64,000 nt of DNA from IMG/VR virus record IMGVR_UViG_3300036770_008729, positions 62,001 through 126,000 of that record, one strand, 5' to 3'. Shown here in pieces: positions 3,254 to 60,540 of this stretch. Position 1 is the stretch's first letter. The number at the start of each line of letters is the position of its first letter. A program made the translations under genes and the position numbers. A model generated the notes under the pieces. It did no database searches and had not been told where the DNA came from. It saw nothing but the letters and a program-made list of their open reading frames with translations.

Positions 3254-3700
3254 TTAGAACTCATCATCATCTATTATAGTTGGATCATATGGATGAAAAT
3301 CTCTTCTTTTCTTATAGTTAATTGTAGGTTTTTTCTCAATAAAATCTTCTATTTTATCATACAACCTTAAACACTCATCATCTATATCTTTTAATTGTAA
3401 TTCTTTACCATTGTAACTGATAGTTCTGTTGTTATCATCAAGTGTAACATTTCCATCCATTAGATATATGATGTAAACACCGGGTTCGATTTCTACTACA
3501 CCTTTTACAACTTTTATACCATCTTGAAGGCGAGCGGATTGAATAGAGTGATTGTCAATCATTCTGTGAATTTTTTCTAATGTATCTCTGTCCTCTTTTT
3601 TATCGATGTTCAAAACTCTACGAGTTCCTCTTACAAGTCTTTGCATTAAAGGTTCCTTTTTAGGCTCTTCAAATTCTTCGAATAATTTTATATACTTCAT
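3254..3700 (-). CDS. hypothetical protein with CTS-like N-terminus
   Basis: Starts MKYIKLFEEFE; AATATATA 4 nt upstream. Confidence 0.75.
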   Translation of the reverse strand: MKYIKLFEEFEEPKKEPLMQRLVRGTRRVLNIDKKEDRDTLEKIHRMIDNHSIQSARLQDGIKVVKGVVEIEPGVYIIYLMDGNVTLDDNNRTISYNGKELQLKDIDDECLRLYDKIEDFIEKKPTINYKKRRDFHPYDPTIIDDDEF

Positions 3701-3704
3701 ATAT

Positions 3705-3712
3705 TATATATT
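3705..3712 (-). promoter_or_regulatory. AATATATA motif 4 nt before ATG (putative phage late promoter)
   Basis: Recurrent fixed-spacing motif before many starts. Confidence 0.5.
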
Positions 3713-3724
3713 AATTTTTTTTTA

Positions 3725-3732
3725 TATATTTG
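3725..3732 (+). promoter_or_regulatory. TAnnTTTG (TATATTTG) host-type promoter element
   Basis: Upstream of ATG 3741; divergent from the AATATATA-driven gene. Confidence 0.6.
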
Positions 3733-3740
3733 TAATTGAA

Positions 3741-4265
3741 ATGAATAAATGGAAATTTATAAAAGCACTCAACTCACCACTTAAACCATTTAAGTTAAAA
3801 TTTTACTTTGGTAAAATAAGTGTAGGTGTGCCTTATTTCTTCCCACGTAGAACCGTAAAAGATCCTGGTAAACCCGGATACCTTAAATTTGTAGATAAAA
3901 AATTTGGCATTGATGTAGTTTCACTTGGATGGAAAACTAAATGGAGTAGTACTGATTATCGATTAGAATGGGAGCCAAGAATATCATTTGTTTTTTTTAA
4001 GTGGCAATTTGTTATCTTCTTCAATGCACCAGAGTCAGAACACTATTGGCCGATTTGGCTTTACTATCATAATGATACCGATAAGACTAAATCGATTAAA
4101 GAAAGAATCGAACAATGTCAACAGGAATATCCCCAGATATGGGAAAGATCTCAAAATGGAAAAAAAGAGACCATAAATTATTATGACTATGTCTTAAAAG
4201 ATAAATGGAAAAAGAAACCACTTGATGAGGTTAGAGATAAAAAATTAGATAAGATATTAAAATAA
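3741..4265 (+). CDS. aromatic-rich hypothetical protein with C-terminal RDKKLDKIL tail
   Basis: Start reassigned to ATG 3741 (MNKWKF) behind promoter motif. Confidence 0.75.
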   Translation: MNKWKFIKALNSPLKPFKLKFYFGKISVGVPYFFPRRTVKDPGKPGYLKFVDKKFGIDVVSLGWKTKWSSTDYRLEWEPRISFVFFKWQFVIFFNAPESEHYWPIWLYYHNDTDKTKSIKERIEQCQQEYPQIWERSQNGKKETINYYDYVLKDKWKKKPLDEVRDKKLDKILK

Positions 4266-4269
4266 GTTA

Positions 4270-17088: not shown

Positions 17089-17511
17089 TTAAGCATTAAA
17101 ACCTGGTGGATCTATAAACAATTCTAAATTGGTGATATACCAATACTCTTCAAAGTCTTTTAATCTCTGTATATCAACTTTAAATCTATTCAATGATTCT
17201 AGAGATGTTCCCCAATAACCATAGGCATTTCCTTTACTACCATGTTTTTCTATAACATCTATCATTCTTAGAATAGTAGGTTTAACTTCAATCCAATAAG
17301 TAGATTTAGGGAAAATAAATTTGAATGTGTAAATTGCAATTCCATAGAATCTATCACACTCACACTTTACCTCACCTCCAGAAATAGGTTCATCTGTAAG
17401 TTCTCTACATATATCAACTAAATCTGAAAAAAGATTATCATTTAAATCTAAAAGATCTGGTCTAGTCAAAGTTAAAGATTCAAACTGATTATAACTTTTT
17501 ATTCTTTTCAT
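17089..17511 (-). CDS. CTS-like protein, apparent paralog of the 43714-47428 family
   Basis: MKRIKSYNQFES; LVDICRELTDE helix; AATATATA 5 nt upstream. Confidence 0.75.
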   Translation of the reverse strand: MKRIKSYNQFESLTLTRPDLLDLNDNLFSDLVDICRELTDEPISGGEVKCECDRFYGIAIYTFKFIFPKSTYWIEVKPTILRMIDVIEKHGSKGNAYGYWGTSLESLNRFKVDIQRLKDFEEYWYITNLELFIDPPGFNA

Positions 17512-17536
17512 ATTTTTATATATTAATAAAATTTAT

Positions 17537-22429: not shown

Positions 22430-23671
22430 TTAATCTGATGAATATTCATCGTATCCACCACCAGTGTCTCTTAATTCTTTACCACTACCTTTTTCATAAT
22501 TATAAAGACATCCATCATCATCATTAAGATAAGACATAGTATCTAAATAAGGATATTGACTAAAATCTGAATCCTCTAAAACAACTTTTATCCTACACTT
22601 TTTAGTAGTTTTTCCATCTGTAATTGATTCATATTGATCCATATTTTGATTTCTTTTCCACCAGAATCCTTGTTTTTCAGCAAATTGTTTGAATAATTCA
22701 ACATCAGAATCTTGCATAGTATAAATTCTATCCATAAACTTTGCAGGTGTTCCATCAATTAAACAATTCCAAAGAATTGCTCTGCCTTTGATTTTTTCAG
22801 CAGTATATTTTTCACCTTCAATTTTACCATCATCTCCATAAAGTATCACTAATGAAACATTTGAATTTTCTGTGTAGATTTGAAAATATTCTTTTTCAAC
22901 GTCAGCCATACAAGAATTAGCAAGTGTCCCACCACCTTTTACATATCTATTATTGTCATACCAATAAGCAATATCATCACCTGTAGCTATATCAAATTGT
23001 TTAAGAATATCTTTTGCAAAGTCATAAGTCGCTTTATATTGATTTGTAAAATCTTCAATTTCTTTATCTGAAAATGTTATTTTAGCTGATCCTAATACTG
23101 CTCTAACTAATCTACCAATTCTAATTGGATTTCTAGATGTATTCCAAAGTCTCATATCTTCAGCTTCTGTTGGTTCCATCGCTACTTTATTGATAACACC
23201 TACTCTTGGATTATCAACACCATATTCTTGAAACATAACATAAATATTACCAGAACTTTGACTAACAGTTTCACCAGTGATGATACCTATTGTTCCTGAT
23301 TCGGGTGCCCAACATCCATATTTATCTTTATCATATCCTAAGGCTCTAAATAATCGATTATTGCCTGTACTATTTGTTAAGTATCTTCCGGATTCAATAA
23401 TTTTCCAAGTCTCAGGTCTATCTTTTGTAAGTTCTTGAACTTTTCTATCTGGAGTAAAACTTACCTCTTCTTTATTGTCTGTTATATCGATATAATTTTG
23501 TGTAAGTTTATCAACTTCTTTGTGATAAAGATTAAGTAAATCATTAGCAATTTTATTTGATTTCATTCTATTCAAAAGATTAATAAATTTCTTTGAATAA
23601 ATTAATTTCGATTCTAGTAATAGTTCATACAATTTACTTTCTGTAATATATTCTTGATATCTTTTAATCAT
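22430..23671 (-). CDS. 413 aa phage protein with CTS-like N-terminus and SCM...GRAILW...MDRIY...YPYLDT motifs
   Basis: Starts MIKRYQEYITES; conserved-looking C-terminal domain of unknown function. Confidence 0.8.
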   Translation of the reverse strand: MIKRYQEYITESKLYELLLESKLIYSKKFINLLNRMKSNKIANDLLNLYHKEVDKLTQNYIDITDNKEEVSFTPDRKVQELTKDRPETWKIIESGRYLTNSTGNNRLFRALGYDKDKYGCWAPESGTIGIITGETVSQSSGNIYVMFQEYGVDNPRVGVINKVAMEPTEAEDMRLWNTSRNPIRIGRLVRAVLGSAKITFSDKEIEDFTNQYKATYDFAKDILKQFDIATGDDIAYWYDNNRYVKGGGTLANSCMADVEKEYFQIYTENSNVSLVILYGDDGKIEGEKYTAEKIKGRAILWNCLIDGTPAKFMDRIYTMQDSDVELFKQFAEKQGFWWKRNQNMDQYESITDGKTTKKCRIKVVLEDSDFSQYPYLDTMSYLNDDDGCLYNYEKGSGKELRDTGGGYDEYSSD

Positions 23672-23761
23672 AAAAATAATTTTTTTACTATTTGTATATA
23701 TTATTTTATCATTTTACAATAATTGATTTTTTAATCAAAAATATTTAAAAATATATACATC

Positions 23762-25567: not shown

Positions 25568-26182
25568 CTACTCCTCTTTATCTTCAGTTTCTATTCCTAA
25601 ATCTTCTTTATCATCAAACTTTTCATCAAGTTCTATTTTTAGTTCAATTAGAAACTCTTCTTTAATTTTCTTAATTTCTACATTTTTGGTAATTTGTCCT
25701 ATGATATCAAATGTATCAATATCATATTTTTTGAACTTTATATAACACTTTTGAATATCATCTTCACTAAAGTCCTTATTAGGATCTTTTGAGATACCTT
25801 CTTTCAAATCAATCATTATGATTAATGTGTAAGTAGCCATATCATCAGAAAATTTAACAGTGAGTGAATCATAAAGTTTAGAATATTTAGAAATTTCAGA
25901 ACTTTCTAATCTTACTCCCAAATCTTTGAAAGACATTTTTTCCTCTTCACCTTCTTCTTCGCCCTGTTCTTTTGCCTTTTTTATACTTTTTTCTTTTTTA
26001 GATTTCTTTTCCTCATCAAAGATATCATTTTGTGGATCTATAAAATCAGCAGATTCCTCATCATCCTCTTCAAACATTCTATCAATTTTTCTTTTGATCT
26101 TCATCAAAGCCATAGAAATATATGACTCAGGAGTATCATTCATACCCTCATTGATAAACTCTGTAAACTTTATTATTTTCAT
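25568..26182 (-). CDS. acidic protein with CTS-like N-terminus
   Basis: MKIIKFTEFINEG; AATATATA 6 nt upstream. Confidence 0.75.
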   Translation of the reverse strand: MKIIKFTEFINEGMNDTPESYISMALMKIKRKIDRMFEEDDEESADFIDPQNDIFDEEKKSKKEKSIKKAKEQGEEEGEEEKMSFKDLGVRLESSEISKYSKLYDSLTVKFSDDMATYTLIIMIDLKEGISKDPNKDFSEDDIQKCYIKFKKYDIDTFDIIGQITKNVEIKKIKEEFLIELKIELDEKFDDKEDLGIETEDKEE

Positions 26183-26262
26183 ATAATCTATATATTAAAA
26201 TCACTTTTCCATTTTTGAAAAAAAGAAAAATCTATATATACCAACAAAATCAAATTAATACT

Positions 26263-35094: not shown

Positions 35095-35350
35095 AGAGTA
35101 TATATTCTCTAAATAATTTAGAGAAATTAGTTTTTCTCCTTTTTTCTTTCTTCTGGTGTTAAAAGTCCCTTTCCAAAGTTTTTTATTCTTTCTTCGTATC
35201 TGGTTTTGACTCTTTCAGAAATAGGAACTGGTGTTCCTTCATCATAGATGGTGATTCTTATACAATAGAATTCAAAGAAGGTGAAAAAACAATCAAGAAA
35301 AAATCTGAAATCGTTAAAAAGAAAAACCAGTAATAAAGATTGATACTATA

Positions 35351-39328: not shown

Positions 39329-40870
39329 TTAAATAATCCTTAAGTATCTCGGAGTTTTGAACTTATCGGTTTCGATTGATAGAGCGTATCTCATTATTTT
39401 TGTAATCAAAGAATTAGATTCTTTGTGACTTACATTATGTAGTTGTAATATAGCAAGAATAATTTGCATAGACTGAATTCTTGATATAAGTCTATTTTCA
39501 CTTTTTGAAATATCAGTTCCTCTTTTTATAGGCTCAACTATTACTAATTGTCCACCTATCGAATCTCTATATTTTTTACACTGTGTAATAAGTTCCATAG
39601 TATAACTTTTTAACTGGTCAATGCTAAGTTGTTTTAATTCATTATATGATTGAAGATTTTGAATTTTATAACCAGAGCTAATTTTCTGATCAATGAATCT
39701 TTTAATTGCATTAAAAGAGATTTTACCATGTCTTGATGTTGAACCTTCTACTTCACCGTCTACATTGACATTATTTCCTGTATTAGAAGAATCAAAATTA
39801 ATTTTTCTATCTTTTATATCCACATCTTTGTTATTTCTATGTTTCCAAATAGAAGTTGTAGATATTTTCGAACCAATACCTTTTAGGTCAGATCCAACAT
39901 GAAATGATTTAATGAAGAAATCTGGTGGATTTTTATCAACCATTGAATTGGTTAATACTCCAAAACGTGATCCAATTTTTTTAAGAGATACTCCGATTAA
40001 TAATTTTTCATCAAATAAACTATTCATTTCGTCTTTTAACTTATGGATGTCTGTACACTCATCAATTCGATTATTTACTTGTTCTACATTATTTCTTGAT
40101 ACTAAATACATATCCGCTGGACAAAACTTAGATATGTTTATATCAGACCAACCACCATCTTTTGCAAATTTTTTATATTTCTTTTCTATATGAACATAAG
40201 GGGAACTATTTCCTACAAATGAGGCGTGATAAATCTCATATAAGTCATTAGTATTAACATATTCTTCTTTCCAGATTCTATTTGGAATCTTACAAAAAGT
40301 ATTAACCCAATCTTCATCCTGTAAAAAGTCATCTAGTAATTGTTCATTTACTTCAACTTTTTCTGGTGTGAAAACCAACTTTTGCATTTGAATATACTTA
40401 TAGAAGAATTCCCTCATATTTCTTGAAGTCAATAATTTATCAGGTAATGCTTGTTTTATACCAAAAAATAAACACTGAACTGATTCAAAGTTTCTAACCA
40501 TTACACCAGCACCCGATGATCCAAACTCTTTAGTCTTTTTGAATTGATTGATTTTGAACTCTTTACCATCTTTACTCATGAACACAGGAATATATCTACT
40601 ACCTGGTTTGAAATAAGACTTAGCCTTATCTATATCGTATTCATCATCTGTAGTAATTTTATCAATAGCAATCTCTGGTTCAACCCATTGTGAGTCGGAC
40701 TTCATTTTATCAACCTTAATTTTCTGATTGCTAGTTGTGGTAAGTTCTTCTTTGTTTTTAATTTTGGTTATAAGAACATCTCCTCTTTTTTGACCATTTA
40801 TCAATTTACCAAGTTCTGTTAAATCAAGTTCTGTTTCTTCTAGGAATTTTTTGAATCTCAACAATTTCAT
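39329..40870 (-). CDS. 513 aa protein with CTS-like N-terminus and PD-(D/E)XK-like nuclease motif
   Basis: MKLLRFKKFLEE; CPADMYLV...LIGVSLKK; AATATATA 5 nt upstream. Confidence 0.6.
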   Translation of the reverse strand: MKLLRFKKFLEETELDLTELGKLINGQKRGDVLITKIKNKEELTTTSNQKIKVDKMKSDSQWVEPEIAIDKITTDDEYDIDKAKSYFKPGSRYIPVFMSKDGKEFKINQFKKTKEFGSSGAGVMVRNFESVQCLFFGIKQALPDKLLTSRNMREFFYKYIQMQKLVFTPEKVEVNEQLLDDFLQDEDWVNTFCKIPNRIWKEEYVNTNDLYEIYHASFVGNSSPYVHIEKKYKKFAKDGGWSDINISKFCPADMYLVSRNNVEQVNNRIDECTDIHKLKDEMNSLFDEKLLIGVSLKKIGSRFGVLTNSMVDKNPPDFFIKSFHVGSDLKGIGSKISTTSIWKHRNNKDVDIKDRKINFDSSNTGNNVNVDGEVEGSTSRHGKISFNAIKRFIDQKISSGYKIQNLQSYNELKQLSIDQLKSYTMELITQCKKYRDSIGGQLVIVEPIKRGTDISKSENRLISRIQSMQIILAILQLHNVSHKESNSLITKIMRYALSIETDKFKTPRYLRII

Positions 40871-40900
40871 ATAAGTATATATTAATATACTTTTTTGAAA

Positions 40901-43611: not shown

Positions 43612-43701
43612 TATTTGATTACCAAGATTTTTTGAGTAAGCTAAGTATATATATGTTTTTTTTTATTTTGTTTTTAGCTTTGTTTTTTAGGTGGTCAATT
43701 T

Positions 43702-43709
43702 AATATATA
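43702..43709 (+). promoter_or_regulatory. AATATATA motif 4 nt before ATG 43714
   Basis: Heads the CTS-like gene cluster. Confidence 0.5.
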
Positions 43710-43713: not shown

Positions 43714-44640
43714 ATGAAGTATTTAAAAACTTTTGAAGAAATTTATTATGATTCTAGAAAACCGGTTGATGGTTATATTGACGCTAATGATTTAGTTGGT
43801 CAAAGATTGTGGTTTCATACTAATAGAACACACCGAAACAATGGTTGGAATGGTATGATTGGTATTTATGATACTACAAGAAGTGGTAGAAAAATAGGAT
43901 TAGCGGGTAAATATACAAATGAAGTTAGATTAACTTCTCCAATTTTCTTTCAGACATCAGAGGCAGGTGCTGAAAATATAAAATCTAAAGGTGATAGAAC
44001 TTTAATTGCTGGGGTTTCTGGTGTGGTGATTCCGACTGATAGTAATACTTCTGGAATGCAAAAAATCACTTACAATCCTTTTGATGTCGGGTATTTTCAT
44101 TTACTAGATGATAGTGGTAAAAAGGAAATAGTTTCTGCTGATGAAGTTTATTTTGTGGCTTCCGAAGATGGAAAATGGGAAATATGGGCAATGAATCCAA
44201 AGTTTAAATTATTAAAAGAGAATAGACACTACCGTGGAGAACATCCTAAATCAATGCCAGATGAAGATAAAGATTATATCAATGATATTTTACTTGAACT
44301 TCAGTTATTGGATATGAGATATGAAATTGTAGAGTGTTGGTATCACAAAGACGAATCTGACCAAACGGTTGGTAATATACATAAACATAGTCGTCCTGAA
44401 GAACTGATAAAGTCATATAGGTCGATTAAAGTAAGTTTATATGATAAGGAAAGGAGATTTTTTAGAATAGATGATATAGACTCCGTTTTAACAAGTCTTA
44501 AGGTATGGTCATCGGGTAAATATGAAATTGATTTATCTTGGCCAAACGAAATGATTTATTTACCAATGGAAGATTTTATAGATGAGTTTGGTGGTGAAGA
44601 ATTATATACAATAGACATTTACATTTACAAAAGAAATTAG
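43714..44640 (+). CDS. two-domain CTS-like protein
   Basis: MKYLKTFEE; N-domain with HTNRTH...EAG...ITYNPF; C-domain YINDILLEL like neighbours. Confidence 0.8.
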   Translation: MKYLKTFEEIYYDSRKPVDGYIDANDLVGQRLWFHTNRTHRNNGWNGMIGIYDTTRSGRKIGLAGKYTNEVRLTSPIFFQTSEAGAENIKSKGDRTLIAGVSGVVIPTDSNTSGMQKITYNPFDVGYFHLLDDSGKKEIVSADEVYFVASEDGKWEIWAMNPKFKLLKENRHYRGEHPKSMPDEDKDYINDILLELQLLDMRYEIVECWYHKDESDQTVGNIHKHSRPEELIKSYRSIKVSLYDKERRFFRIDDIDSVLTSLKVWSSGKYEIDLSWPNEMIYLPMEDFIDEFGGEELYTIDIYIYKRN

Positions 44641-44643: not shown

Positions 44644-45186
44644 ATGAAATACTTAAAGAAATATAAATTATTTGAATCCACTCCTGATGAAGAATGGAGT
44701 ACAGTAGAAGAAAGAGAAAATACTATTAGACATATATCACTTGAATTTGAAGACGTTGGACTTATATGTAGTATTTCTAAAGTCAGAAAAGATGTTGAAT
44801 TAGAACCAGACCGTTATAATGGTAAAACAAAAACTGATCTCTTTTTAGAAGTTTATTTGTCAAGAAATTGGTATTCACCAAATAGAGAAATACCTGGTGT
44901 AGTAAATCCTGAAGGTGGTTACCCTGGTAATCTTATTTTCTGGTATGAAATCAAAAATATAATCATTAGAATTGCTAAATGGTATTATGAAGTAGAGAGC
45001 ATTTATGATCCTATAAGTAAAGATGCTGTTTATAGAGATGAAAAGGAGAAATCACCTTTGAGATTCTTTGGTAGTGGAATAGAGATGTTGATTGGTTGTA
45101 GTAAAGAAGAGGATTTTGAGAAATTAGGTGATTTTATTTCATTTACTAATTTTAGAATAATGATTAAAATATCTGAACAAGTATAA
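44644..45186 (+). CDS. CTS-like protein
   Basis: MKYLKKYKLFES; IRHISLEFED. Confidence 0.8.
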   Translation: MKYLKKYKLFESTPDEEWSTVEERENTIRHISLEFEDVGLICSISKVRKDVELEPDRYNGKTKTDLFLEVYLSRNWYSPNREIPGVVNPEGGYPGNLIFWYEIKNIIIRIAKWYYEVESIYDPISKDAVYRDEKEKSPLRFFGSGIEMLIGCSKEEDFEKLGDFISFTNFRIMIKISEQV

Positions 45187-45190
45187 AGTT

Positions 45191-45694
45191 ATGAAGTGGA
45201 TAAAATTATATGAAAATTTCGATGATAACATTTCTATTGAAAAAGATGTTGAAGATATATTCTGGGACTTAGAGGGATTTAAAGTTGAGATTTCATTCTG
45301 GGTAAATGGTGCTCGTGGTGGTTTTTTGGCAAGTGATGAGTCTGGATCGCAAAAATATGGACCAATTGCAGATAATGGTAAATTATACTTAAAAGTTGAG
45401 GTCAAAAAAATAGAACCACCTGGTAACTTCCTTACAAAAGATGGTTTTAATTGGATAGAAACTAAATCTTACTTTAATAGATTGAGAAGTTTTTTAAGCG
45501 AGTATAGTCCAGTTAAATATAAAATCAACACTATGGTATTTAGCCACGCACCTCGTTTTAGTATTGTTAGTAACGCTGAAATACACGATACTTATCAAAC
45601 ATCATTTGATTATGTTGATTCTAAATATATAGAAAAAGATTTTACAGATAGGAATACCTTAACATCGGTATATTATTTTTTTGAAAGATTATGA
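45191..45694 (+). CDS. CTS-like protein
   Basis: MKWIKLYENF; VEDIFWDLE. Confidence 0.8.
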   Translation: MKWIKLYENFDDNISIEKDVEDIFWDLEGFKVEISFWVNGARGGFLASDESGSQKYGPIADNGKLYLKVEVKKIEPPGNFLTKDGFNWIETKSYFNRLRSFLSEYSPVKYKINTMVFSHAPRFSIVSNAEIHDTYQTSFDYVDSKYIEKDFTDRNTLTSVYYFFERL

Positions 45695-46341
45695 AATACT
45701 TAAAATTATTTGAAGAAGCCACTAATGTTCCTGATTACTTTTTACCATTAGAAAGTATCAATCATTATTTAGATCCGAAATCTGGTGTGATTTATCCTAT
45801 ATTAAAATCTGGTGGATATGATGAAAGAAATGATTTTGATTTAGAAGCCTTTACTTCTGGTCCTGAAGAAGCTCAAATTCCTGGAGATGCTCCAACTGGA
45901 AATATTTCAGATGAAGATCAAATGATTATAGACCAGTATCGTCAGTCAACTGAAAAGTATTTCAAAGATAAAATTAATTGGAGTTTAATAGATTTAGCAA
46001 AAGAAAGGTCTTTAGAAATAATTGATAATGGAGGTAGGTTATTAATCTCTGTTTCTATTAAAGTTTCAAATACCTCATCATTTTTTATCTATTATGAGGA
46101 TATAACTCACACAAGACCTAAACAATTCTGGAATATGTATTTTGAAGATTCAATGTCTATATTGTCGAAATGTACAGGCGAATTAATTTATAATTTTTTA
46201 TTATCAACAAAGTTAAATCAAGCTAACCTCCCTTGGGGTGAGGATTATATATCTTATAAAACAGGTGATACAGAAACCAGTGAATTGGTCAGACTACTTC
46301 ATAAGTTATATCCTGAAGAGAATATAAAGGCGATGAATTAA
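45691..46341 (+). CDS. CTS-like protein
   Basis: MKYLKLFEE. Confidence 0.8.
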   Translation: MKYLKLFEEATNVPDYFLPLESINHYLDPKSGVIYPILKSGGYDERNDFDLEAFTSGPEEAQIPGDAPTGNISDEDQMIIDQYRQSTEKYFKDKINWSLIDLAKERSLEIIDNGGRLLISVSIKVSNTSSFFIYYEDITHTRPKQFWNMYFEDSMSILSKCTGELIYNFLLSTKLNQANLPWGEDYISYKTGDTETSELVRLLHKLYPEENIKAMN

Positions 46342-46343
46342 TA

Positions 46344-46793
46344 ATGAAACACCTAAAAAAATATAGATTATTTGAATCACAGAAGTATAATATGGGTGAT
46401 TTTATGGATATCATTTATGATTTGCGTCTTAGGTGTTATGACTTTAACGATGGTGGTTGCACTTGGAAAATTCTACCGGAAGAAGAAATACAAATCAACT
46501 TACTTAGACTTGCCTATAATAGAACTATTGAGTCTAAAGGCGTTGTATTTAAGTTATTAATTGATATACGAAATATAAAATCAGATGATGATCTTAATTC
46601 TCAATCTCTACCTAATTGGTTTATCAATAAATGTCTAGAAATAGAATCAATGATGAGAATGTATGGATTTAAAACTCTACCTTCTATCAAAAGACCAACT
46701 GACTGGGAACATTTTGACACAATTGACGAACTAAGTGAGGCAAGTGGTCTTTTTAGAGAAGTTCAACTTCTTTTCAGAAAAATTGGAGAGTAG
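46344..46793 (+). CDS. CTS-like protein
   Basis: MKHLKKYRLFES; FMDIIYDL. Confidence 0.8.
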   Translation: MKHLKKYRLFESQKYNMGDFMDIIYDLRLRCYDFNDGGCTWKILPEEEIQINLLRLAYNRTIESKGVVFKLLIDIRNIKSDDDLNSQSLPNWFINKCLEIESMMRMYGFKTLPSIKRPTDWEHFDTIDELSEASGLFREVQLLFRKIGE

Positions 46794-46866: not shown

Positions 46867-46924
46867 CAATTTATTTCCAAATATAATAATTAAATTTATA
46901 TATAACTAAAATTAATTTCTTATT

Positions 46925-47005
46925 ATGTTCAGTTCGGGAAACATCTTCATTATGATTTTTGGCATTCTGTTAGCCTTAGGATTAATTTTTAATTTTAATA
47001 TATAA
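46925..47005 (+). CDS. putative 26 aa single-TM peptide
   Basis: MFSSGNIFIMIFGILLALGLIFNFNI; below track cutoff. Confidence 0.45.
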   Translation: MFSSGNIFIMIFGILLALGLIFNFNI

Positions 47006-47008
47006 GTT

Positions 47009-47428
47009 ATGAGATACTTAAAGTCATATAAAGTATTTGAGATAAGAGAAAGTCCTTATTTAGATGGATCGGATAGTCCTATGAAAGTTAAATATGGAAA
47101 AGAAGTTATTGATAAGTGTGATGAGGTGATTGAGTATATCAAACAGATTATGTTAAACTTAGAAGATTTGAAATTTTATTGTTATGTGAATTACACACCT
47201 TTAACAAAAGTTTATCAGGAAGTTGAGCCTATTTTATTTGTTGATATAAGTCAGAATCCAGAAATACCATTAGATGAAGAAGCAAAAACAGAACTTGAGT
47301 ATACAATAGAATCAATTAAAAAATATATTGATTCAAAACATTTTTTCCTAACTGATTATCGTTTTAATGATAGAGGTGTTGAAAAGTATTCAGCAAGATT
47401 CTATCCAAAACCTGAAAAGCAAAACTGA
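47009..47428 (+). CDS. CTS-like protein
   Basis: MRYLKSYKVFE; IKQIMLNLED; AATATATA 4 nt upstream. Confidence 0.8.
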   Translation: MRYLKSYKVFEIRESPYLDGSDSPMKVKYGKEVIDKCDEVIEYIKQIMLNLEDLKFYCYVNYTPLTKVYQEVEPILFVDISQNPEIPLDEEAKTELEYTIESIKKYIDSKHFFLTDYRFNDRGVEKYSARFYPKPEKQN

Positions 47429-47429
47429 T

Positions 47430-48077
47430 ATGAAATACATTAAAACACAAGAAGAATTCAATGAAGGGTTCAATCTTAAAAAAGCACTAATCGGTGGTGC
47501 AATAGGGGCATCTATTGGTTTTTCCGCTTTACATCTTTCAGAAATTGATGGTAAAGCAAAAAAAGAAGATACTGAAATAGTATCTGGTCAGAAATTCGAT
47601 CAATTTGATGTTTATGTTAATAGTGAAGAATTTGATCTCAATATATCCGAAGATGGTGTAATAACTTCAGAATGGACTGAAGAACATGGTTCTGGTAAAA
47701 ACAGAACTACACATACTTATAGAGGAGCTACCGTTCCAAAAGGCACAACCGATATATGGGTCGAATCAAAATTCGCTGAAATAAATGGCAATGTATTTGT
47801 TAGCACTAAGCCTTTACAAAATGGCAATCATATTAGATTATCCGATTTAGATATAGAAGAACAAACTGCCACCTATACAATCTATAGTGGTGGTATGTTT
47901 GGTGACTTAGATTATATCATAGTTGATAATGGACATGTTGATGGTGAGGAATTCACAATTGATGGTAAGATAGGTAATTGGAGTTGTGATAAATTAGGAA
48001 GTCATATTTATAGTTTCACCTTTAAAAACTTTGGTGGAGGATCTGGTGGTGGTGCTGGAAGTGGAGGAAAATTTTAA
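47430..48077 (+). CDS. CTS-like protein with GxxxG hydrophobic helix and Gly-rich C-terminus
   Basis: MKYIKTQEEFNEG-FNLKKALIGGAIGASIGFSAL; ends FGGGSGGGAGSGGKF; start reassigned to 47430. Confidence 0.75.
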   Translation: MKYIKTQEEFNEGFNLKKALIGGAIGASIGFSALHLSEIDGKAKKEDTEIVSGQKFDQFDVYVNSEEFDLNISEDGVITSEWTEEHGSGKNRTTHTYRGATVPKGTTDIWVESKFAEINGNVFVSTKPLQNGNHIRLSDLDIEEQTATYTIYSGGMFGDLDYIIVDNGHVDGEEFTIDGKIGNWSCDKLGSHIYSFTFKNFGGGSGGGAGSGGKF

Positions 48078-53796: not shown

Positions 53797-53826
53797 TTTC
53801 ATCTTGTGAATTTTAATATATAACTT

Positions 53827-54393
53827 ATGAAACATCTAAAAAACTATAAGTTATTTGAAAATTTAAATACACCTATCAGTATAGAACAATTCTTATCTGA
53901 AATCAATTTCCCTCAAGAATTAAGAACACAAGTAATAAACTGGTGGAATTTAAACAGAGGTGAATTTATAATTCATTGTTTTAATTTCTCATCACCTCAA
54001 CCAATAGCTGGTGTTTTTCTTGGTGTAGATGAAATTGCTATCAATAAAAGATTACCAATGCCACCTCATATTAAATTATTTTTAGCTCTTCATGAATCTG
54101 GACATTGTAATCAACACAGAGAAGGAAGATTTATGACTGGTTATTATGACACCGTAATTGCTGGTAACAAACCAGCCTTTTTACAAGCCTATATGGATCT
54201 TGAAAAAGAAGCTAATGACTATGCTTTTAATTCATTAAGAGAGATGGGATTAGAAAGATTGTATCAATTTGAGGAATCTAGATTAAGAGGAAATCAAAGA
54301 GCAGGTGAAATGGTTTGGTCAATGATGACTGCTGATATAGCGAGATTCAATCCTAATGATTTTATTGACCTTTTGAAAAAACAAATACTTTAA
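53827..54393 (+). CDS. HExxH zinc metallopeptidase-like protein with CTS-like N-terminus
   Basis: MKHLKNYKLFEN; ALHESGHCNQH; EKEANDYA; AATATATA (53815-53822) 4 nt upstream. Confidence 0.75.
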   Translation: MKHLKNYKLFENLNTPISIEQFLSEINFPQELRTQVINWWNLNRGEFIIHCFNFSSPQPIAGVFLGVDEIAINKRLPMPPHIKLFLALHESGHCNQHREGRFMTGYYDTVIAGNKPAFLQAYMDLEKEANDYAFNSLREMGLERLYQFEESRLRGNQRAGEMVWSMMTADIARFNPNDFIDLLKKQIL

Positions 54394-58300: not shown

Positions 58301-58977
58301 ATGTAAATTGTGTTTGGTTTATAAATGGTAATCAAGTAACAAACTGCACCACATCTCAATCTTTTAATACATCTGGAAGTTATTCAGTAACTCTTTCAGT
58401 GACCAATACAAATGGTTGTTCTAACACATCACCAAATATATTGGTGAATGTTTATCCAAAGGCGGTTTCTAACTTTTCAGCTAACCCAATTGTAACAGAT
58501 TTATTAAACCCAAATGTTAGTTTTACCAACTTCTCTACCTCAGGAAATTATCAGTGGTCTTTTGGAGATGGAAACATTTCTTCACTTATAAACCCACAGA
58601 ATACCTATTCTGATACTGGAAGTTATAATGTTCAGTTAATTGTTGTTTCACCTGATGGGTGTAGGGACACTTCTTCACTTGAGATATACATAAGTGATTT
58701 ATTTACATTTTATATTCCTAATGCTTTTACACCGAATGGTGATGGTAAAAATGATGTATTCACACCTCAGATAAGTGGTGCAGAGTGGTATCAATTCTGG
58801 ATTTACAACAGATGGGGAGAGCAAATTTGGGACTCTGGAACTAATGGTGAACCTTGGAATGGAATCTATAAAGGTAGTTTAGTTCAACAAGATGTTTATG
58901 TTTGGAAGTTGATTGTAAAGGAAAAACAACGAGGCAAAAAGCATTTATTTACAGGACATGTTAGTGTTATTAAATAA
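55360..58977 (+). CDS. SprB-repeat/PKD adhesin-like protein with T9SS type B (gliding motility-associated) C-terminal domain
   Basis: Signal peptide; repeated YSWNT...ATGL..G.YTVTVTD..GC units; PKD (WSFGDG); CTD YIPNAFTPNGDGKNDVF...IYNRWGE...WNG...DVYVWK. Confidence 0.9.
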   Translation: MKKLTLFLIATLFSFIAISQPANNNCGTAQNLGTLPTPAACPNGVGANVNVTGTTVNATYPLPYNYLLGCQTGGNQPAPSPDVWYQFVASGNQVNINITPGSSPFLANPSITLWSGSCGSLNGFNCDNNGSNNGNNSATFEPLTPGQTYYIQISGSSATSTGNFNMTVNASNDCNNCLQNVSLVATPNPVNGFYQPGQTINFCLTITGYNQVSSNWLHGVIPTFGNGWNLATLTTTPANSCSTAGNWQWANSNTSTATNLITGPGFYYFSGSGGSGNNFGDNGSTCTRTFCWSIQTKSGCTSGNNLNISVNTTADGETGSWTSPACQGDPNINFAAQLNCCQTTATSTSLTCFGGTNATATANPTGVSPFNYSWNTTPVQTTQTATGLSAGSYTVTVTDNGGCVSSASVTITQPTQLQVTTTSTNASCGQLNGSATATASGGTGPYSYSWNTTPVQTTGTATGLGPGTYTVTATSAGNCQSTGTVTISSTGSITATSTSTNVTCNGANNGTATANPNGSTNYTYLWNTIPPQNTQTATGLAPGSYTCTVTSFGCQTTTTVTITQPPVLTAAITTSNVICNGGNTGSAVVTPNGGTPGYTYLWTTSPNQITATATNLTSGTYSVNVTDLNGCTVIASANITQPQQLNITLVSSQNPGCSGSSTGQIVVSASGGVGPTYFYTLNGGTPQTSGTFTGLSGGTYTISVSDANNCTQQIQVSLTQPFPISSSYTVTNVNCNSGNNGQIQLTTIGGTPPYTYLWSNSSQSPNLTSLTAGTYSVVITDASGCQFNLTNIVVTQPNAINILLTPNPSSICIGQSSSITALIVGGTLPYNFVWSNGQLTQNITVTPTTTTGYTLQVSDANGCGLSANTIINVNPPLTVLTTSSQGTICVGQSSTLTASVTGGNGGPYTYNWNPTAQSGQSIIVTPGTTTLYTVTVGDGCSTPVTSTVTVNVNLLPVVQYTTTALSGCEPLTVTFTNNTPNVNCVWFINGNQVTNCTTSQSFNTSGSYSVTLSVTNTNGCSNTSPNILVNVYPKAVSNFSANPIVTDLLNPNVSFTNFSTSGNYQWSFGDGNISSLINPQNTYSDTGSYNVQLIVVSPDGCRDTSSLEIYISDLFTFYIPNAFTPNGDGKNDVFTPQISGAEWYQFWIYNRWGEQIWDSGTNGEPWNGIYKGSLVQQDVYVWKLIVKEKQRGKKHLFTGHVSVIK

Positions 58978-58980
58978 ATT

Positions 58981-59009
58981 AAAAAACCTGTTGAAAGACA
59001 GGTTTTTTT
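58981..59009 (+). terminator. intrinsic terminator
   Basis: aaaaaacctgt-tgaaag-acaggtttttt. Confidence 0.8.
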
Positions 59010-59037
59010 ATTGCAATTTTTTTACTATATTTGTATT

Positions 59038-59430
59038 ATGAGAAAAGAAAGCATTATAGAAATGATTGATAAAAGAATTATTGAAAACTTTGTCAATGGT
59101 TATAGTCCAGAGTTTATTATAGCTGACATACAATCAAAAACAGATAAAATGTCTGACTTTATTACAAATCAAGGAATTGATTTAGAAAAATTTATTGATA
59201 TGGATTTTGATGTTTTAACTGATGATGATTTCTCAAAAGATAAATTACCAATGACTAGAACTAAATATACAGTTTACTATGTTAAACAATCTAGAAAAAG
59301 AATAAAAGATATAAACTGGATTATTGAGAATTGTAAAAGATTTCCACATTTATCAAAATCACAAGTATTTAGGTTGATTAAACTTAGAGAAAAGTTGAGT
59401 CGTGAGAACGCTATTGAATTACCCTTTTAA
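59038..59430 (+). CDS. hypothetical protein
   Basis: Start reassigned to ATG 59038, 4 nt after TATATTTG (59026-59033). Confidence 0.65.
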   Translation: MRKESIIEMIDKRIIENFVNGYSPEFIIADIQSKTDKMSDFITNQGIDLEKFIDMDFDVLTDDDFSKDKLPMTRTKYTVYYVKQSRKRIKDINWIIENCKRFPHLSKSQVFRLIKLREKLSRENAIELPF

Positions 59431-60162
59431 GTTTCTTATCCATTCAGAGAACTTTATTAAGCTTTCATTAAGTGTCTCAACAAAATTAAAATCTTTTAAG
59501 AAGTCACCAAAGTCTTCAACATAACCTTTTTTACTTTCATCTGTTTTGGTTTGAGTCCATTGCCAGTTAAAACTTAATTGAGTTGGTGTTTTAAACCCGA
59601 AGAATTTTAACACTTCTTTTTCTAATTCAACTGCTTCACTTCCATTCCAGTTATGACCAGTTGCTACAATTCCAACTTCTTTATCCTTTAATAAGTTAGA
59701 TTCTCCTAATGTAGTGTGTCTATTCTCAAGCCAAGTTAATCTTTCAATTAATTGTGTGTAGATAGCATTCATTTTACCCCATCTTATAGATCCAAAAAAG
59801 ATAACTATATCTGCCTCAAAGATTGCATTTGCAACTTTATACATTTCATCTGATTTATTATTGAGTGAAGCCCAACATCTAATTATTTTATGTGGATTCT
59901 TTTCTTTATCCTTTAGAAGTGCGTCTTTTAGACCACAAGTATTTCCTCTTTTAGTTGATACATTACCTTCACATGGAAAGATTTTAAGTTTAGACACATT
60001 AATAATCTCTATACCTTCAATCTTTTTAGCAATTTCATCTGCTATTATAGAAGATTTAGGAAGTTCTTTATCACCAGACCATCTATTAGAAGTAGTAAGA
60101 AAAACAATCTTTTTCTTTTGATTTTTCTTAAGATAGTTGTAAAGTCTTTTCAATTTATCCAT
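59419..60162 (-). CDS. flavodoxin-like / NAD(P)H-dependent FMN reductase family protein
   Basis: LTTSNR, IFPCEG, CWAS, ADIVIFFGSIRWG, VATGHNW; start reassigned to 60162. Confidence 0.75.
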   Translation of the reverse strand: MDKLKRLYNYLKKNQKKKIVFLTTSNRWSGDKELPKSSIIADEIAKKIEGIEIINVSKLKIFPCEGNVSTKRGNTCGLKDALLKDKEKNPHKIIRCWASLNNKSDEMYKVANAIFEADIVIFFGSIRWGKMNAIYTQLIERLTWLENRHTTLGESNLLKDKEVGIVATGHNWNGSEAVELEKEVLKFFGFKTPTQLSFNWQWTQTKTDESKKGYVEDFGDFLKDFNFVETLNESLIKFSEWIRNLKG

Positions 60163-60207
60163 ATTGTATATATAAAAAAAAGAATATACAATCTTAATAT
60201 ATACAAT

Positions 60208-60540
60208 ATGAAAAAGTTTACACAATTAAACGAAGCTAAGTTTTTTACACCAGATCCAAGTATTATTAAAAAATATGCTGCTAGAATTATTCCCCTTTAT
60301 ATAACTGGTGAATTAAAGACTAGAGATACTAAATTAGTAGATGAGTGGTTAGAGATGAATAGGTCATCTGAATCTCACAAAAATGAAAATGTTATTTGTG
60401 ATTTAGAAATTATAGCAATAAAAAACATTTTTGATAATCCACTAACTAATAATGGATATTCTCAATTAGTTCAAGATATAGATGCTGGTTGTCCACGATT
60501 AGAAAGATTTTTAAGACCTATTATTTTCAAAAAGTTCTAA
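60208..60540 (+). CDS. hypothetical protein with CTS-like N-terminus
   Basis: MKKFTQLNEAK; AATATATA (60196-60203) 4 nt upstream. Confidence 0.7.
   Translation: MKKFTQLNEAKFFTPDPSIIKKYAARIIPLYITGELKTRDTKLVDEWLEMNRSSESHKNENVICDLEIIAIKNIFDNPLTNNGYSQLVQDIDAGCPRLERFLRPIIFKKF

What the first reader, a model, noticed from the sequence alone, without database searches (positions are those of the whole stretch)
3254..60540. About 15 unrelated proteins share an N-terminal peptide resembling the T4 capsid-targeting sequence
Seen: MKYIKLFEEFE (3700-), MKRIKSYNQFES (17511-), MIKRYQEYITES (23671-), MKIIKFTEFINE (26182-), MKLKKYEQFLES (35094-), MKLLRFKKFLEE (40870-), MKYLKTFEE, MKYLKKYKLFES, MKWIKLYENF, MKYLKLFEE, MKHLKKYRLFES, MRYLKSYKVFE, MKYIKTQEEFNE (43714-48077), MKHLKNYKLFEN (53827) and MKKFTQLNE (60208). 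The pattern is basic residues, two spaced aromatics, then Glu near residue 9-12. Established: T4 internal proteins IPII/IPIII carry a 10-residue capsid-targeting sequence (MKTYQEFIAE) removed by the gp21 prohead protease after Glu. Inference: this is a modular 'package me' tag defining a large set of proteins loaded into the head and injected with the DNA.
Basis: partly seen in the sequence, partly recalled or inferred. Interest (0 to 1): 0.85.

Follow-up and report, generated by a model that had tools for sequence, protein, structure and literature searches.

The report
Capsid-loading tag shared by megaphage proteins
Fifteen unrelated proteins in this stretch of a giant bacteriophage genome start with the same 12-residue peptide, which looks and behaves in silico like the phage T4 tag that loads proteins into the virus head, and relatives put it on over 100 genes each, pointing to a very large pre-packed set of proteins.

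Summary
All 15 N-termini sit at the stated starts. Thirteen form one tight motif, M-K-[YH]-[LI]-K-x-[YF]-x-x-F-E; two are looser. The protein bodies are unrelated.

The window is from a Bacteroidota-type megaphage. Its 642-kb relative LR756502.1 carries the tag on 126-180 of 929 genes. The tag also occurs at hundreds of ORF starts in AT-rich viral contigs.

Five results favour a T4-type capsid-targeting sequence:
- The tag shares T4's aromatic-x-x-aromatic spacing and its hydrophobic-x-Glu cleavage-type end.
- Relatives have a T4-like head module: portal, gp21-family protease with conserved catalytic His/Ser fused to a scaffold, and gp23-type capsid protein.
- That scaffold holds twelve 14-residue repeats ending Y-S-E-Y-I-A-E, close to the T4 tag, and has the genome's highest [LIV]-x-E density.
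- Tagged genes share a TAATATATA box with head and tail genes.
- Tagged bodies are depleted in [LI]-x-E and enriched in [LI]-x-D, replicated in three data sets.

Packaging, cleavage and injection are not shown, and no protease lies in the window. I read this as a new, greatly expanded variant of a known mechanism (confidence about 0.6).

The parts
3254..3700 (-). Tagged gene, 148 aa, N-terminus MKYIKLFEEFEE. No Pfam or PHROG family and no homologue in LR756502.1.
   Evidence: (leave-one-out score 23.2)
17089..17511 (-). Tagged gene, 140 aa, MKRIKSYNQFES. It is the only member without a hydrophobic residue at P3 before the Glu (Q-F-E).
   Evidence: (13.0)
22430..23671 (-). Tagged gene, 413 aa, MIKRYQEYITES. 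Its Y-Q-E-Y-I-T-E-S is the T4-type ('class B') tag, closest to the T4 peptide and to the scaffold repeat. The LR756502.1 orthologue (51% identity) begins MNIKKYDDYISE. Function unknown.
25568..26182 (-). Tagged gene, 204 aa, MKIIKFTEFINE (class B, F-x-E-F-I-N-E). The LR orthologue (62% identity) begins MKIRKFTEFINE.
33934..35094 (-). Tagged CCA-adding tRNA nucleotidyltransferase, 386 aa, MKLKKYEQFLES. The PolyA_pol head domain starts at residue 38. Y6, F9, L10 and E11 are invariant in 23 aligned homologues, yet residues 1-13 have pLDDT below 50 in the AlphaFold model.
39329..40870 (-). Tagged gene, 513 aa, MKLLRFKKFLEE. It matches phrog_1462 (unknown function) and has a basic body (pI 9.1). 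The gene at the equivalent position next to topoisomerase in LR begins MRFISNFLGFQQVNE.
43714..44640 (+). First gene of a tandem array of tagged genes, 308 aa, MKYLKTFEEIYY, with a Phage_L5_gp82 domain at residues 56-149.
44644..45186 (+). Tagged gene, 180 aa, MKYLKKYKLFES. It lies inside the operon and has no box of its own.
   Evidence: (22.1)
45191..45694 (+). Tagged gene, 167 aa, MKWIKLYENFDD.
45691..46341 (+). Tagged gene, 216 aa, MKYLKLFEEATN. Its body is 30% identical to part of a tagged LR gene at 21692(-).
46344..46793 (+). Tagged gene, 149 aa, MKHLKKYRLFES.
   Evidence: 18.3
47009..47428 (+). Tagged gene, 139 aa, MRYLKSYKVFEI, with its own box.
47430..48077 (+). Tagged gene, 215 aa from the internal ATG, MKYIKTQEEFNE. 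A Gly-rich hydrophobic segment follows the tag. The LR orthologue (43% identity) begins MRNIKTYKQHNEE.
53827..54393 (+). Tagged gene, 188 aa, MKHLKNYKLFEN.
   Evidence: 18.1
60208..60540 (+). Weak member, 110 aa, MKKFTQLNEAKF. It has the box and an L-N-E site but lacks the second aromatic residue.
   Evidence: (-4.5)
3705..3713 (-). TAATATATA box, 4 nt upstream of the ATG at 3700.
17517..17525 (-). TAATATATA box, 5 nt upstream of the ATG at 17511.
23695..23703 (-). TAATATATA box, 23 nt upstream of the ATG at 23671. This is the long-leader spacing seen at head genes of relatives.
26189..26197 (-). TAATATATA box, 6 nt upstream of the ATG at 26182.
35099..35106 (-). AATATATA box (variant GAATATATA), 4 nt upstream of the ATG at 35094.
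40876..40884 (-). TAATATATA box, 5 nt upstream of the ATG at 40870.
43701..43709 (+). TAATATATA box, 4 nt upstream of the ATG at 43714. It heads the array 43714-46793.
46996..47004 (+). TAATATATA box, 4 nt upstream of the ATG at 47009. It heads the pair 47009-48077.
53814..53822 (+). TAATATATA box, 4 nt upstream of the ATG at 53827.
60195..60203 (+). TAATATATA box, 4 nt upstream of the ATG at 60208.

Best explanation
The shared N-terminal dodecapeptide is a capsid-targeting and processing tag of the T4 type, used by a Bacteroidota-infecting megaphage lineage.

Proposed mechanism, with each step marked shown or inferred:
1. Tagged genes are transcribed late, together with head genes, from a TAATATATA-type promoter, often as almost leaderless mRNAs. 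The shared box and its spacing are shown; the timing is inferred.
2. The basic-aromatic-x-x-aromatic part of the tag forms a short amphipathic helix that docks onto the scaffolding core of the prohead. In this lineage the core is built from tandem 14-residue repeats that resemble the tag. The sequence resemblance is shown; docking is inferred.
3. The gp21-family prohead protease, fused to that scaffold, cuts after the Glu of the hydrophobic-x-Glu site at residues 8-12. This frees the mature cargo inside the head while the scaffold is cut into 14-mers. The motif, its density and the catalytic residues are shown; cleavage is inferred.
4. The cargo stays in the head and enters the host with the DNA (inferred). 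The cargo is mostly small, fast-evolving proteins with no recognisable family. It also includes a CCA-adding enzyme here, and in the relative an RNA ligase and a lysozyme-domain protein.
For: (a) The tag is a modular linear motif.
- It sits on 15 unrelated bodies in the window and on 126 in LR756502.1. The 141 tagged proteins fall into 122 BLAST clusters.
- Y6, F9, L10 and E11 are invariant across homologues of the CCA-adding enzyme, yet AlphaFold leaves residues 1-13 outside the fold with pLDDT below 50.

(b) It resembles the T4 tag at the positions mapped experimentally.
- In T4, residues 4 and 7 are needed for targeting and residues 8 and 10 for processing (PMC9026906). T4 has Y4, F7, I8 and E10.
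- Here the same aromatic-x-x-aromatic-[ILV]-x-E is found in 23671 and 26182, and aromatic-x-[ILV]-F-E in the main class.
- 14 of 15 have [LIVFY]-x-E ending at residues 8-12.

(c) Relatives have a T4-type head module.
- Portal_T4 scores 1e-57 and Gp23 4e-28.
- The protease domain's best PDB match is T4 gp21 (5JBL, E = 8.7e-5). Its invariant H72 and S127 align to T4 H85 and S140.
- The capsid protein N-terminus KKWGPVLEN aligns to T4 gp23 NKWKPLLEG.

(d) The scaffold looks like a substrate of the same protease.
- The protease-scaffold protein has 40 [LIV]-x-E sites in 699 aa, rank 1 of 483 proteins.
- Twelve sites are exactly 14 residues apart, in repeats LDKNIxYSEY[IL]AE[NSH].
- 76 homologues average 5.2 sites per 100 aa against 1.9 for neighbouring proteins.
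- T4 gp22 has 7.4 per 100 aa. Each T4 internal protein has exactly one site, inside its tag.

(e) The tag tracks the scaffold site consensus across lineages.
- T4: tag F-I-A-E-A, gp22 L-I-A-E-A.
- Chryseobacterium phage MA9V-2: tags F-I-N-E-A, scaffold sites mostly I-N-E-S-A.

(f) Tagged bodies avoid the cleavage motif.
- LR756502.1: [LI]-x-E observed/expected 0.96 against 1.10 in untagged proteins; [LI]-x-D 1.39 against 1.17; permutation p = 0.0002-0.0008.
- 273 tagged against 737 untagged IMG/VR proteins: 0.96 against 1.27, and 1.41 against 1.12; p = 0.0002.
- The window: 0.69 against 1.14.
- In T4, Asp at the cleavage position blocks processing (PMC9026906).

(g) The promoter box is shared with structural genes.
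- It lies upstream of terminase, portal, protease, capsid and large tail-like genes in LR756502.1.
- In the window TAATATATA occurs 16 times against 3.6 expected, and 9 of the 16 sit directly upstream of tagged genes.

(h) Tagged genes lie inside the head module of relatives: two directly upstream of the portal and one after the capsid gene, conserved across IMG/VR loci.
Against: - There are no virion data. The lineage is uncultured, and nothing shows packaging, cleavage or injection.
- The window contains no protease, scaffold or capsid gene. Its 281-kb contig was not among the protease-bearing loci retrieved, so the head module is inferred from relatives that share 50-85% protein identity and gene order.
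- The Pfam Peptidase_S77 hit is below the gathering score (20.2 against 27 bits).
- The cleavage-motif avoidance is modest. At offset 2 the tagged/untagged ratio is 0.92 for Glu and 1.16 for Asp, and other offsets fluctuate between 0.88 and 1.16. Paralogues inflate the IMG/VR sample.
- Tagged bodies are mostly acidic (pI 4.5-5.7), unlike basic T4 IPII/IPIII.
- Between 126 and 180 distinct cargo species, 14-19% of genes, is far beyond any known phage.
- The box also precedes untagged genes, so it does not mark the class uniquely.
- Some codon positions are more uniform than genome usage: Ile9 is ATA in 96%, Tyr7 is TAT in 92%.
- The main class differs in register from T4, with Glu directly after the second aromatic residue.
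Confidence: 0.6

Rival explanations
1. The tag does bind the prohead core and is cut by the protease, but the tagged proteins are transient assembly factors or core fillers. They are degraded or expelled before DNA packaging, as T4 gp22, gp67 and gp68 are, and are not delivered to the host.
For: - Tagged genes lie inside the head module of relatives.
- The tag resembles the scaffold repeat.
- The acidic bodies would be unfavourable next to packed DNA.
Against: - Tagged bodies are depleted in the cleavage motif, whereas true core proteins are enriched in it. T4 gp22, gp67 and gp68 carry 3.8-7.4 sites per 100 aa, and the protease-scaffold protein here carries 5.7.
- Most tagged genes are accessory, variable and unrelated. 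They include enzymes (CCA-adding enzyme, RNA ligase, lysozyme domain) that have no role in assembly.
Confidence: 0.12
2. The peptide is a linear motif for some other shared partner that is not the capsid. Candidates are the phage's own DnaK-DnaJ-GrpE system encoded in the window, an intracellular compartment or assembly site, or a regulated-proteolysis signal.
For: - The tag is conserved yet lies outside the fold.
- Its basic and hydrophobic character suits Hsp70 binding (my own knowledge of DnaK peptide preferences).
- A complete Hsp70 system is encoded at 13819-14895, 15729-16205 and 20408-22273.
- The very large number of tagged genes is easier to accept for a cytoplasmic sorting signal.
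Against: - It does not explain the invariant Glu with a hydrophobic residue at P3.
- It does not explain the match to the T4 tag at the experimentally mapped positions.
- It does not explain the tag-like scaffold repeats, the way tag and scaffold site consensus track each other across lineages, or the specific shift from [LI]-x-E to [LI]-x-D in tagged bodies.
Confidence: 0.15
3. The conservation is selected at the nucleotide level. It could be a promoter plus start cassette that drives translation of nearly leaderless mRNAs, or a recombination module that shuffles accessory genes, like the promoter-stem-loop cassettes of T4-type phages.
For: - The box lies only 4-7 nt from the ATG.
- Some codons are more uniform than genome usage: Ile9 ATA 96%, Tyr7 TAT 92%, and an excess of C-ending His/Tyr at position 3.
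- Tagged genes cluster in variable arrays.
Against: - At K5, F7, N8, E9, F10 and E11, synonymous codon use equals genome usage.
- Genes inside operons keep the tag without the box (44644, 45191, 45691, 46344, 47430).
- Genes with a long leader keep it too (23671).
- Conservation follows amino-acid classes (Y/F, I/L/V, K/R).
Confidence: 0.05
4. The similarity is a chance by-product of AT-rich codon usage just after start codons.
For: The genome is about 30% G+C, and Lys-rich N-termini are common.
Against: - Thirteen hits where about 0.2 are expected.
- The score distribution is bimodal.
- Other gene starts score at most 5.5.
- The aromatic residues and Glu are invariant in homologues.
Confidence: 0.01

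Closest known systems
Capsid targeting sequence (CTS) of phage T4 internal proteins IPI, IPII and IPIII, removed by prohead protease gp21
   Same: - A short N-terminal peptide shared by otherwise unrelated proteins.
- A basic start, two aromatic or hydrophobic residues three apart, then [IL]-x-Glu.
- A genome with a T4-type portal, gp21-family protease, scaffold and gp23-type capsid protein.
- Cargo genes that are variable.
(PMC9026906; PMC3012670.)
   Different: - The scale is 15 genes in 64 kb and 126-180 per genome, against 3 in T4.
- The main tag class is 11-12 residues with Glu directly after the second aromatic residue (Y-K-[ILV]-F-E).
- The cargo is mostly acidic.
- The protease is fused to a scaffold made of tag-like 14-residue repeats.
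- The hosts are Bacteroidota.
- Nothing has been tested experimentally.
Polymorphic internal-protein loci of T-even phages: diverse defence-countering proteins sharing only the CTS
   Same: It is the same logic of a conserved address label on fast-changing cargo. PMC3012670 states that the T-even internal proteins are a highly diverse set with only a conserved CTS. Ten of the 15 tagged genes here have no homologue in a relative that shares gene order.
   Different: Here the cargo genes are spread through the whole genome in arrays. They include recognisable enzymes (CCA-adding enzyme, RNA ligase, lysozyme domain).
Ejection and inner-body proteins of phiKZ-like giant phages (SPN3US, 201phi2-1) with protease-removed propeptides
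   Same: These are giant phages with about 50 head proteins, many packaged and ejected. They have a gp21-related protease that cuts after Glu, and propeptides thought to target proteins to the prohead (PMC5694885).
   Different: Their propeptides are mostly 80-130 residues long and are not one shared peptide. Their cleavage motif is A/S/G-x-E, whereas here the motif is aliphatic-x-E. A/G/S-x-E is not depleted in the tagged bodies.
Phage P1 Dar antirestriction proteins, and encapsulin cargo-loading peptides (analogues only)
   Same: Short terminal peptides direct cargo into an HK97-fold shell during assembly. This rests on my own knowledge, plus PMC9024508 for P1.
   Different: The sequences and machinery are unrelated. 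Encapsulin tags are C-terminal and are not removed.

Membership tests
T4-type capsid targeting sequence | A short (10-19 residue) N-terminal peptide shared by proteins whose mature parts are unrelated | tested here: met
   There are 15 tags in the window, and the bodies give no BLASTP hit better than E = 0.17. The 141 tagged proteins fall into 122 clusters.
T4-type capsid targeting sequence | Two aromatic or hydrophobic residues three apart in the N-terminal part (T4 residues 4 and 7, needed for targeting; PMC9026906) | tested here: met
   Y/F at position 7 and F at position 10 in the main class; positions 5/8 or 6/9 in 23671, 26182, 35094 and 40870. This is a sequence-level test only. The 60208 peptide lacks the second aromatic residue.
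T4-type capsid targeting sequence | The peptide ends in a gp21-type site, aliphatic or hydrophobic-x-Glu (T4 residues 8 and 10) | tested here: met
   14 of 15 have [LIVFY]-x-E with the Glu at residues 8-12. The exception is 17511, which has Q-F-E. In LR756502.1, 97 of 126 have [LIVF]-x-E within the first 20 residues.
T4-type capsid targeting sequence | The same genome encodes a gp21-family prohead protease and a scaffolding core | tested here: inconclusive
   This is met in the relative LR756502.1 and in 76 IMG/VR relatives. None lies in the window, and none was found on its 281-kb contig.
T4-type capsid targeting sequence | Detectable sequence homology to the T4 peptide | tested here: inconclusive
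   The peptide is too short for statistics. In 23671, K-R-Y-Q-E-Y-I-T-E matches the T4 peptide read from L015 at 6 of 9 positions. The main class scores poorly against it in the ungapped register.
T4-type capsid targeting sequence | The protein is present in virions with the peptide removed after Glu | not testable with these tools
   The lineage is uncultured and no proteome is available. Indirect evidence: tagged bodies avoid [LI]-x-E.
T4-type capsid targeting sequence | The peptide alone suffices to package a foreign protein | not testable with these tools
   This needs a packaging assay.
Peptidase S77 / T4 gp21 prohead protease (699-aa protein of the relative, L005:29272-31371) | Pfam PF03420 at or above its gathering score | tested here: not met
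   20.2 bits against 27; E = 4.6e-4.
Peptidase S77 / T4 gp21 prohead protease (699-aa protein of the relative, L005:29272-31371) | A family profile finds solved gp21 as its best match | tested here: met
   A profile of 14 homologues hits 5JBL (prohead core protein protease) at E = 8.7e-5. The next hit has E = 0.38.
Peptidase S77 / T4 gp21 prohead protease (699-aa protein of the relative, L005:29272-31371) | Catalytic His and Ser conserved (T4 H85 and S140; the assignment is from my own knowledge) | tested here: met
   Invariant H72 (GEFDHP) and S127 (VSSR) align to T4 GELNH85P and VS140SR.
Peptidase S77 / T4 gp21 prohead protease (699-aa protein of the relative, L005:29272-31371) | Gene order portal - protease - (scaffold) - major capsid protein | tested here: met
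   Portal_T4 at 222545, the protease-scaffold gene at 225272 and Gp23 at 227452. The order is the same in Chryseobacterium phage MA9V-2, whose gene is annotated as prohead core protein serine protease.

The most novel reading that the evidence does not exclude
A widespread clade of freshwater and environmental megaphages devotes about one gene in six to capsid cargo addressed by a peptide tag. The tag is in effect one copy of the scaffold's own 14-residue repeat, so any protein that acquires it co-assembles with the scaffold, is trimmed by the fused protease, and is delivered with the DNA. The cargo would be a proteome of more than 100 species available in the first minute of infection. It would include tRNA-repair enzymes (CCA-adding enzyme, RNA ligase), a lysozyme-domain protein, and scores of fast-evolving candidate anti-defence proteins.
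Probability: 0.45. Interest if true: 0.85.

Novelty: new variant of a known kind. Interest (0 to 1): 0.77.

Why it matters
- **An experimental handle on uncultured giants.** If right, a simple sequence rule predicts the internal and ejected proteome of phages with 0.6-0.8 Mb genomes that nobody can yet grow.
- **A pointer to new function.** It flags hundreds of proteins with no known family as candidates for immediate-early host takeover or anti-defence roles.
- **A mechanism for cargo recruitment.** It suggests the tag is a mimic of the scaffold repeat, an idea that could also explain the T4 tag, since the T4 scaffold protein gp22 starts with a similar L-I-A-E-A.
- **A large natural library of packaging tags.** These could be useful for phage-based protein delivery.
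- **Part of why these genomes are so large.** A sizeable share of their genes may be payload.

Tried and rejected
- **Codon bias or chance:** rejected.
- **Hidden paralogy of the 15 proteins:** rejected at BLAST level. Profile-level remote homology was not tested.
- **Purely nucleotide-level conservation:** largely rejected by synonymous variation and by tags inside operons, though some codon uniformity remains.
- **Function of the tagged proteins:** Pfam, PHROGs and PDB sequence searches were mostly empty. The hits were PolyA_pol in 35094, Phage_L5_gp82 in 43714 and phrog_1462 in 40870. Of the 20 longest tagged proteins in LR756502.1, only one had a family, Phage_lysozyme.
- **A cultured relative with many tags and a virion proteome:**
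  - The first 50 kb of Tenacibaculum phage PTm1 has one weak hit.
  - The 735-kb phage LR756501.1 almost lacks the main class and has looser F-x-N-E tags.
  - The common 222-aa tagged family has no useful cultured homologue.
  - Chryseobacterium phage MA9V-2 has only two T4-type tags in its head module, and I did not look in the MA9V papers for virion proteomics.
- **Protease on the window's own contig:** not found on IMGVR_UViG_3300036770_008729, 281 kb.
- **Prior description:** no paper describing this tag in huge phages turned up.
- **A/G/S-x-E as the cleavage motif, as in phiKZ-like phages:** it is not depleted in tagged bodies, so it was not pursued.

Full report
**Source and context**

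The window is about 30% G+C and densely coding with the standard code. Its topoisomerase II large subunit is 71% and 69% identical to those of the uncultured huge phages LR756502.1 (642 kb) and LR745206.1 (635 kb). The window shares gene order with LR756502.1 at 475-520 kb, with 50-85% protein identity. An exact 35-mer places it on IMG/VR contig IMGVR_UViG_3300036770_008729, 281 kb.

Two giant proteins carry type IX secretion sorting domains, which points to a Bacteroidota host. The capsid protein of the relative groups with the 'Mahaphage' genomes, the Lak phages, and jumbo phages of Tenacibaculum, Chryseobacterium, Flavobacterium and Sphingomonas.

**The observation**

All 15 peptides start at an ATG at the reported coordinates.

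- A leave-one-out position matrix scores 13 of them at 4.8 or above.
- Internal 12-mers average -12.5 (sd 5.5), and only 0.23% reach 5.
- No other gene start in the window exceeds 5.5.
- The 23671 and 60208 peptides are weak in that register.
- Without the first 15 residues the proteins show no similarity (best E = 0.17).
- Synonymous codons vary inside the motif.

So the motif is real, far beyond chance, acts at the peptide level, and sits on unrelated bodies.

**Scale**

I fetched LR756502.1 in 14 pieces and scanned every ATG followed by at least 50 codons.

- 127 score 8 or above, nearly all at the first ATG of their ORF. That is 126 of 929 called genes.
- A looser rule (a basic residue, aromatic-x-x-aromatic, then hydrophobic-x-E) adds 54 more where 12 are expected by chance. 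The union is about 180 genes, 19%.
- Many of the additions are strikingly T4-like, for example MIKRYSQFIKE, MVKKYFEFINE and MSRIRKYKEFITES.
- The 141 tagged proteins (126 from LR756502.1 plus the 15 in the window) fall into 122 BLAST clusters.
These loci hold 331 matrix hits, 312 of them at first ATGs, in contigs of 22-42% G+C, often as tandem arrays.
- Two 50-kb samples of the more distant 735-kb phage almost lack the main class but do have looser F-x-N-E tags.

**Conservation among orthologues**

Ten of the 15 tagged genes have no homologue in LR756502.1. The orthologues of 23671, 26182, 35094 and 47430 keep the tag.

The tagged CCA-adding enzyme has many metagenomic homologues; the 120 listed are 73-100% identical. 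118 of them begin M-[KR]-[LI]-K-x-Y-x-x-F-L-E-[SA], with only the x positions varying. AlphaFold2 on that alignment folds the enzyme (mean pLDDT 78.6) but leaves residues 1-13 at pLDDT below 50. The tag is therefore an invariant linear motif outside the fold.

**Comparison with T4**

- The literature maps T4 targeting to residues 4 and 7 and processing to residues 8 and 10. Asp at position 10 blocks processing but not targeting (PMC9026906).
- T-even internal proteins are diverse and share only the tag (PMC3012670).
- All gp21-type proteases cut after Glu (PMC5694885).
- The tags here keep the aromatic-x-x-aromatic spacing. In 14 of 15 they also keep [LIVFY]-x-E ending at residues 8-12.

**Head machinery in relatives**

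LR756502.1 encodes a terminase homologue, then Portal_T4 (1e-57), a 699-aa protein, and Gp23 (4e-28), in T4 order.

- The 699-aa protein's N-terminal domain hits Peptidase_S77 below threshold (20.2 against 27 bits).
- A profile of 14 homologues finds T4 gp21 (5JBL) as its top PDB match (E = 8.7e-5). Invariant H72 and S127 align to T4 H85 and S140.
- The capsid protein's N-terminal propeptide aligns to that of gp23. It has only two candidate sites, V-L-E20 and I-N-E43.

**The scaffold**

- The C-terminal part of the 699-aa protein contains twelve exact 14-residue repeats, LDKNIxYSEY[IL]AE[NSH]. Each ends in a T4-tag-like Y-x-E-Y-I-A-E.
- The protein has the highest [LIV]-x-E density of all 483 proteins of at least 150 aa (5.7 per 100 aa).
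- 76 IMG/VR homologues average 5.2 against 1.9 for their neighbours, and are the densest protein in 72 of 76 loci.
- T4 gp22, gp21, gp68 and gp67 show 7.4, 4.3, 4.3 and 3.8. The T4 internal proteins have exactly one site each, inside the tag.
- Tag and scaffold-site consensus agree within each lineage. In T4 the tag has F-I-A-E-A and gp22 has L-I-A-E-A. In MA9V-2 the tags have F-I-N-E-A and the scaffold sites are mostly I-N-E-S-A.

From this I infer that the tag mimics a scaffold repeat.

**Cleavage-motif avoidance**

| Data set | [LI]-x-E observed/expected, tagged vs untagged | [LI]-x-D observed/expected, tagged vs untagged | Permutation p |
|---|---|---|---|
| LR756502.1 | 0.96 vs 1.10 | 1.39 vs 1.17 | 0.0002-0.0008 |
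| IMG/VR, 273 vs 737 proteins | 0.96 vs 1.27 | 1.41 vs 1.12 | 0.0002 |
| Window, [LIV]-x-E | 0.69 vs 1.14 | not compared here | not computed |

A/G/S-x-E is not depleted. Offset 2 is the most negative of offsets 1-5, but the effect is modest. I treat this as supportive rather than decisive.

**Promoter**

- TAATATATA occurs 16 times in the window against 3.6 expected. No shuffle out of 100 reaches 16.
- Nine of the 16 lie 4-6 nt (23 nt for 23671) upstream of tagged genes. The remaining tagged genes are downstream in the two arrays, or carry a variant box.
- In LR756502.1 the AATATATA box has two spacings.
  - At 4-8 nt from the ATG it precedes most tagged genes and some structural genes.
  - At 18-30 nt it precedes terminase, portal, protease, capsid and large tail-like genes.
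- I read it as the late promoter. Other window genes carry the Bacteroidota-type TAnnTTTG box instead.

**Cargo**

- Almost all tagged proteins lack any known family.
- The exceptions are the CCA-adding enzyme, an L5_gp82 domain and phrog_1462.
- In LR756502.1 the exceptions are a lysozyme-domain protein and the orthologue of the window's T4-type RNA ligase. That orthologue carries MKKLHRYNSFIKES on a 20-residue extension.
- Tagged bodies in the window are mostly acidic.

**Verdict**

It is a greatly expanded and sequence-shifted variant of the T4 capsid-targeting system, not a new category. I found no prior description of it in huge phages.

Noticed in passing
window 13819-14895(-), 15729-16205(-), 20408-22273(+): The phage encodes a complete Hsp70 system: DnaJ, GrpE and DnaK (HSP70 E = 1.8e-214). 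All three are conserved in LR756502.1.
   Followed up: partly
window 26500-28422(+), 28440-29702(+), 29653-31200(+): A PrkA / DUF444 (YeaH-like) / SpoVR triad sits contiguously here. It is 75-86% identical to LR756502.1 copies that are split between about 274-277 kb and about 520 kb in that genome. This is an unusual stress-kinase module for a phage.
   Followed up: no
window 4270-8769(-) and 55360-58977(+): Two giant proteins (1499 and 1205 aa) have signal peptides, PKD/SprB repeats and type IX secretion sorting domains (Por_Secre_tail, CHU_C). The phage appears to use the host's T9SS.
   Followed up: partly
window 18772-20040(+), 33934-35094(-), 52719-53141(+): A set of RNA-repair-type genes: a T4 Rnl1-type RNA ligase, a CCA-adding enzyme and a cyclic-phosphate-processing receiver domain (cREC_REC). 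The ligase orthologue in LR756502.1 carries a clear tag on a 20-residue extension that the window copy lacks (it begins MNIKRYIPTYEE).
   Followed up: partly
window upstream of 462, 17549, 31233, 52719, 53210: A Bacteroidota-type TAnnTTTG (-7) box lies 4-14 nt before the ATG of these untagged genes. They probably form a separate, host-sigma-dependent class, also with very short leaders.
   Followed up: partly
L005:29272-31371 (LR756502.1); also L139:23914-26337 and L137:16980-20603: Protease-scaffold fusion proteins of 699-1207 aa. The Mahaphage versions contain 12 or more perfect 14-residue repeats, each with a cleavage-type site. They may be the most regular phage scaffold yet described.
   Followed up: yes
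window 47430-48077(+): Immediately after the tag this protein has a Gly-rich hydrophobic stretch (ALIGGAIGASIGFSAL) that resembles a membrane segment. The stretch is conserved in the LR orthologue. SPN3US ejection protein gp47 is reported to have a similar feature after its propeptide (PMC5694885).
   Followed up: no
window 3606-4265(+) versus 3254-3700(-): A 219-aa plus-strand ORF overlaps the start of the tagged minus-strand gene by 95 nt and fills the 570-nt gap after the 1499-aa gene. Neither ORF has a homologue in LR756502.1. Which one is real in the overlap is unresolved, though the tag and box favour the minus-strand gene.
   Followed up: no
window 35414-35965(-), 870-1853(+), 13126-13818(-), 31233-32159(+), 24019-25032(-), 10549-11625(+): Other notable genes: a NusG homologue, an SPFH/Band 7 protein, an N6/N4 DNA methylase, a UvdE UV endonuclease, a peptidoglycan-binding amidase (likely endolysin) and a GMP-reductase/IMPDH-like enzyme. 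ARAGORN found no tRNA genes in the window.
   Followed up: no
IMG/VR loci L020, L041, L045, L048, L051, L052, L056: A very common family of 222-264 aa proteins starting MKHIKPYKIFE[SN] occurs in tandem arrays of up to seven copies spaced about 670-800 bp. The nearest cultured-phage homologues are hypothetical proteins of Vibrio phages.
   Followed up: partly
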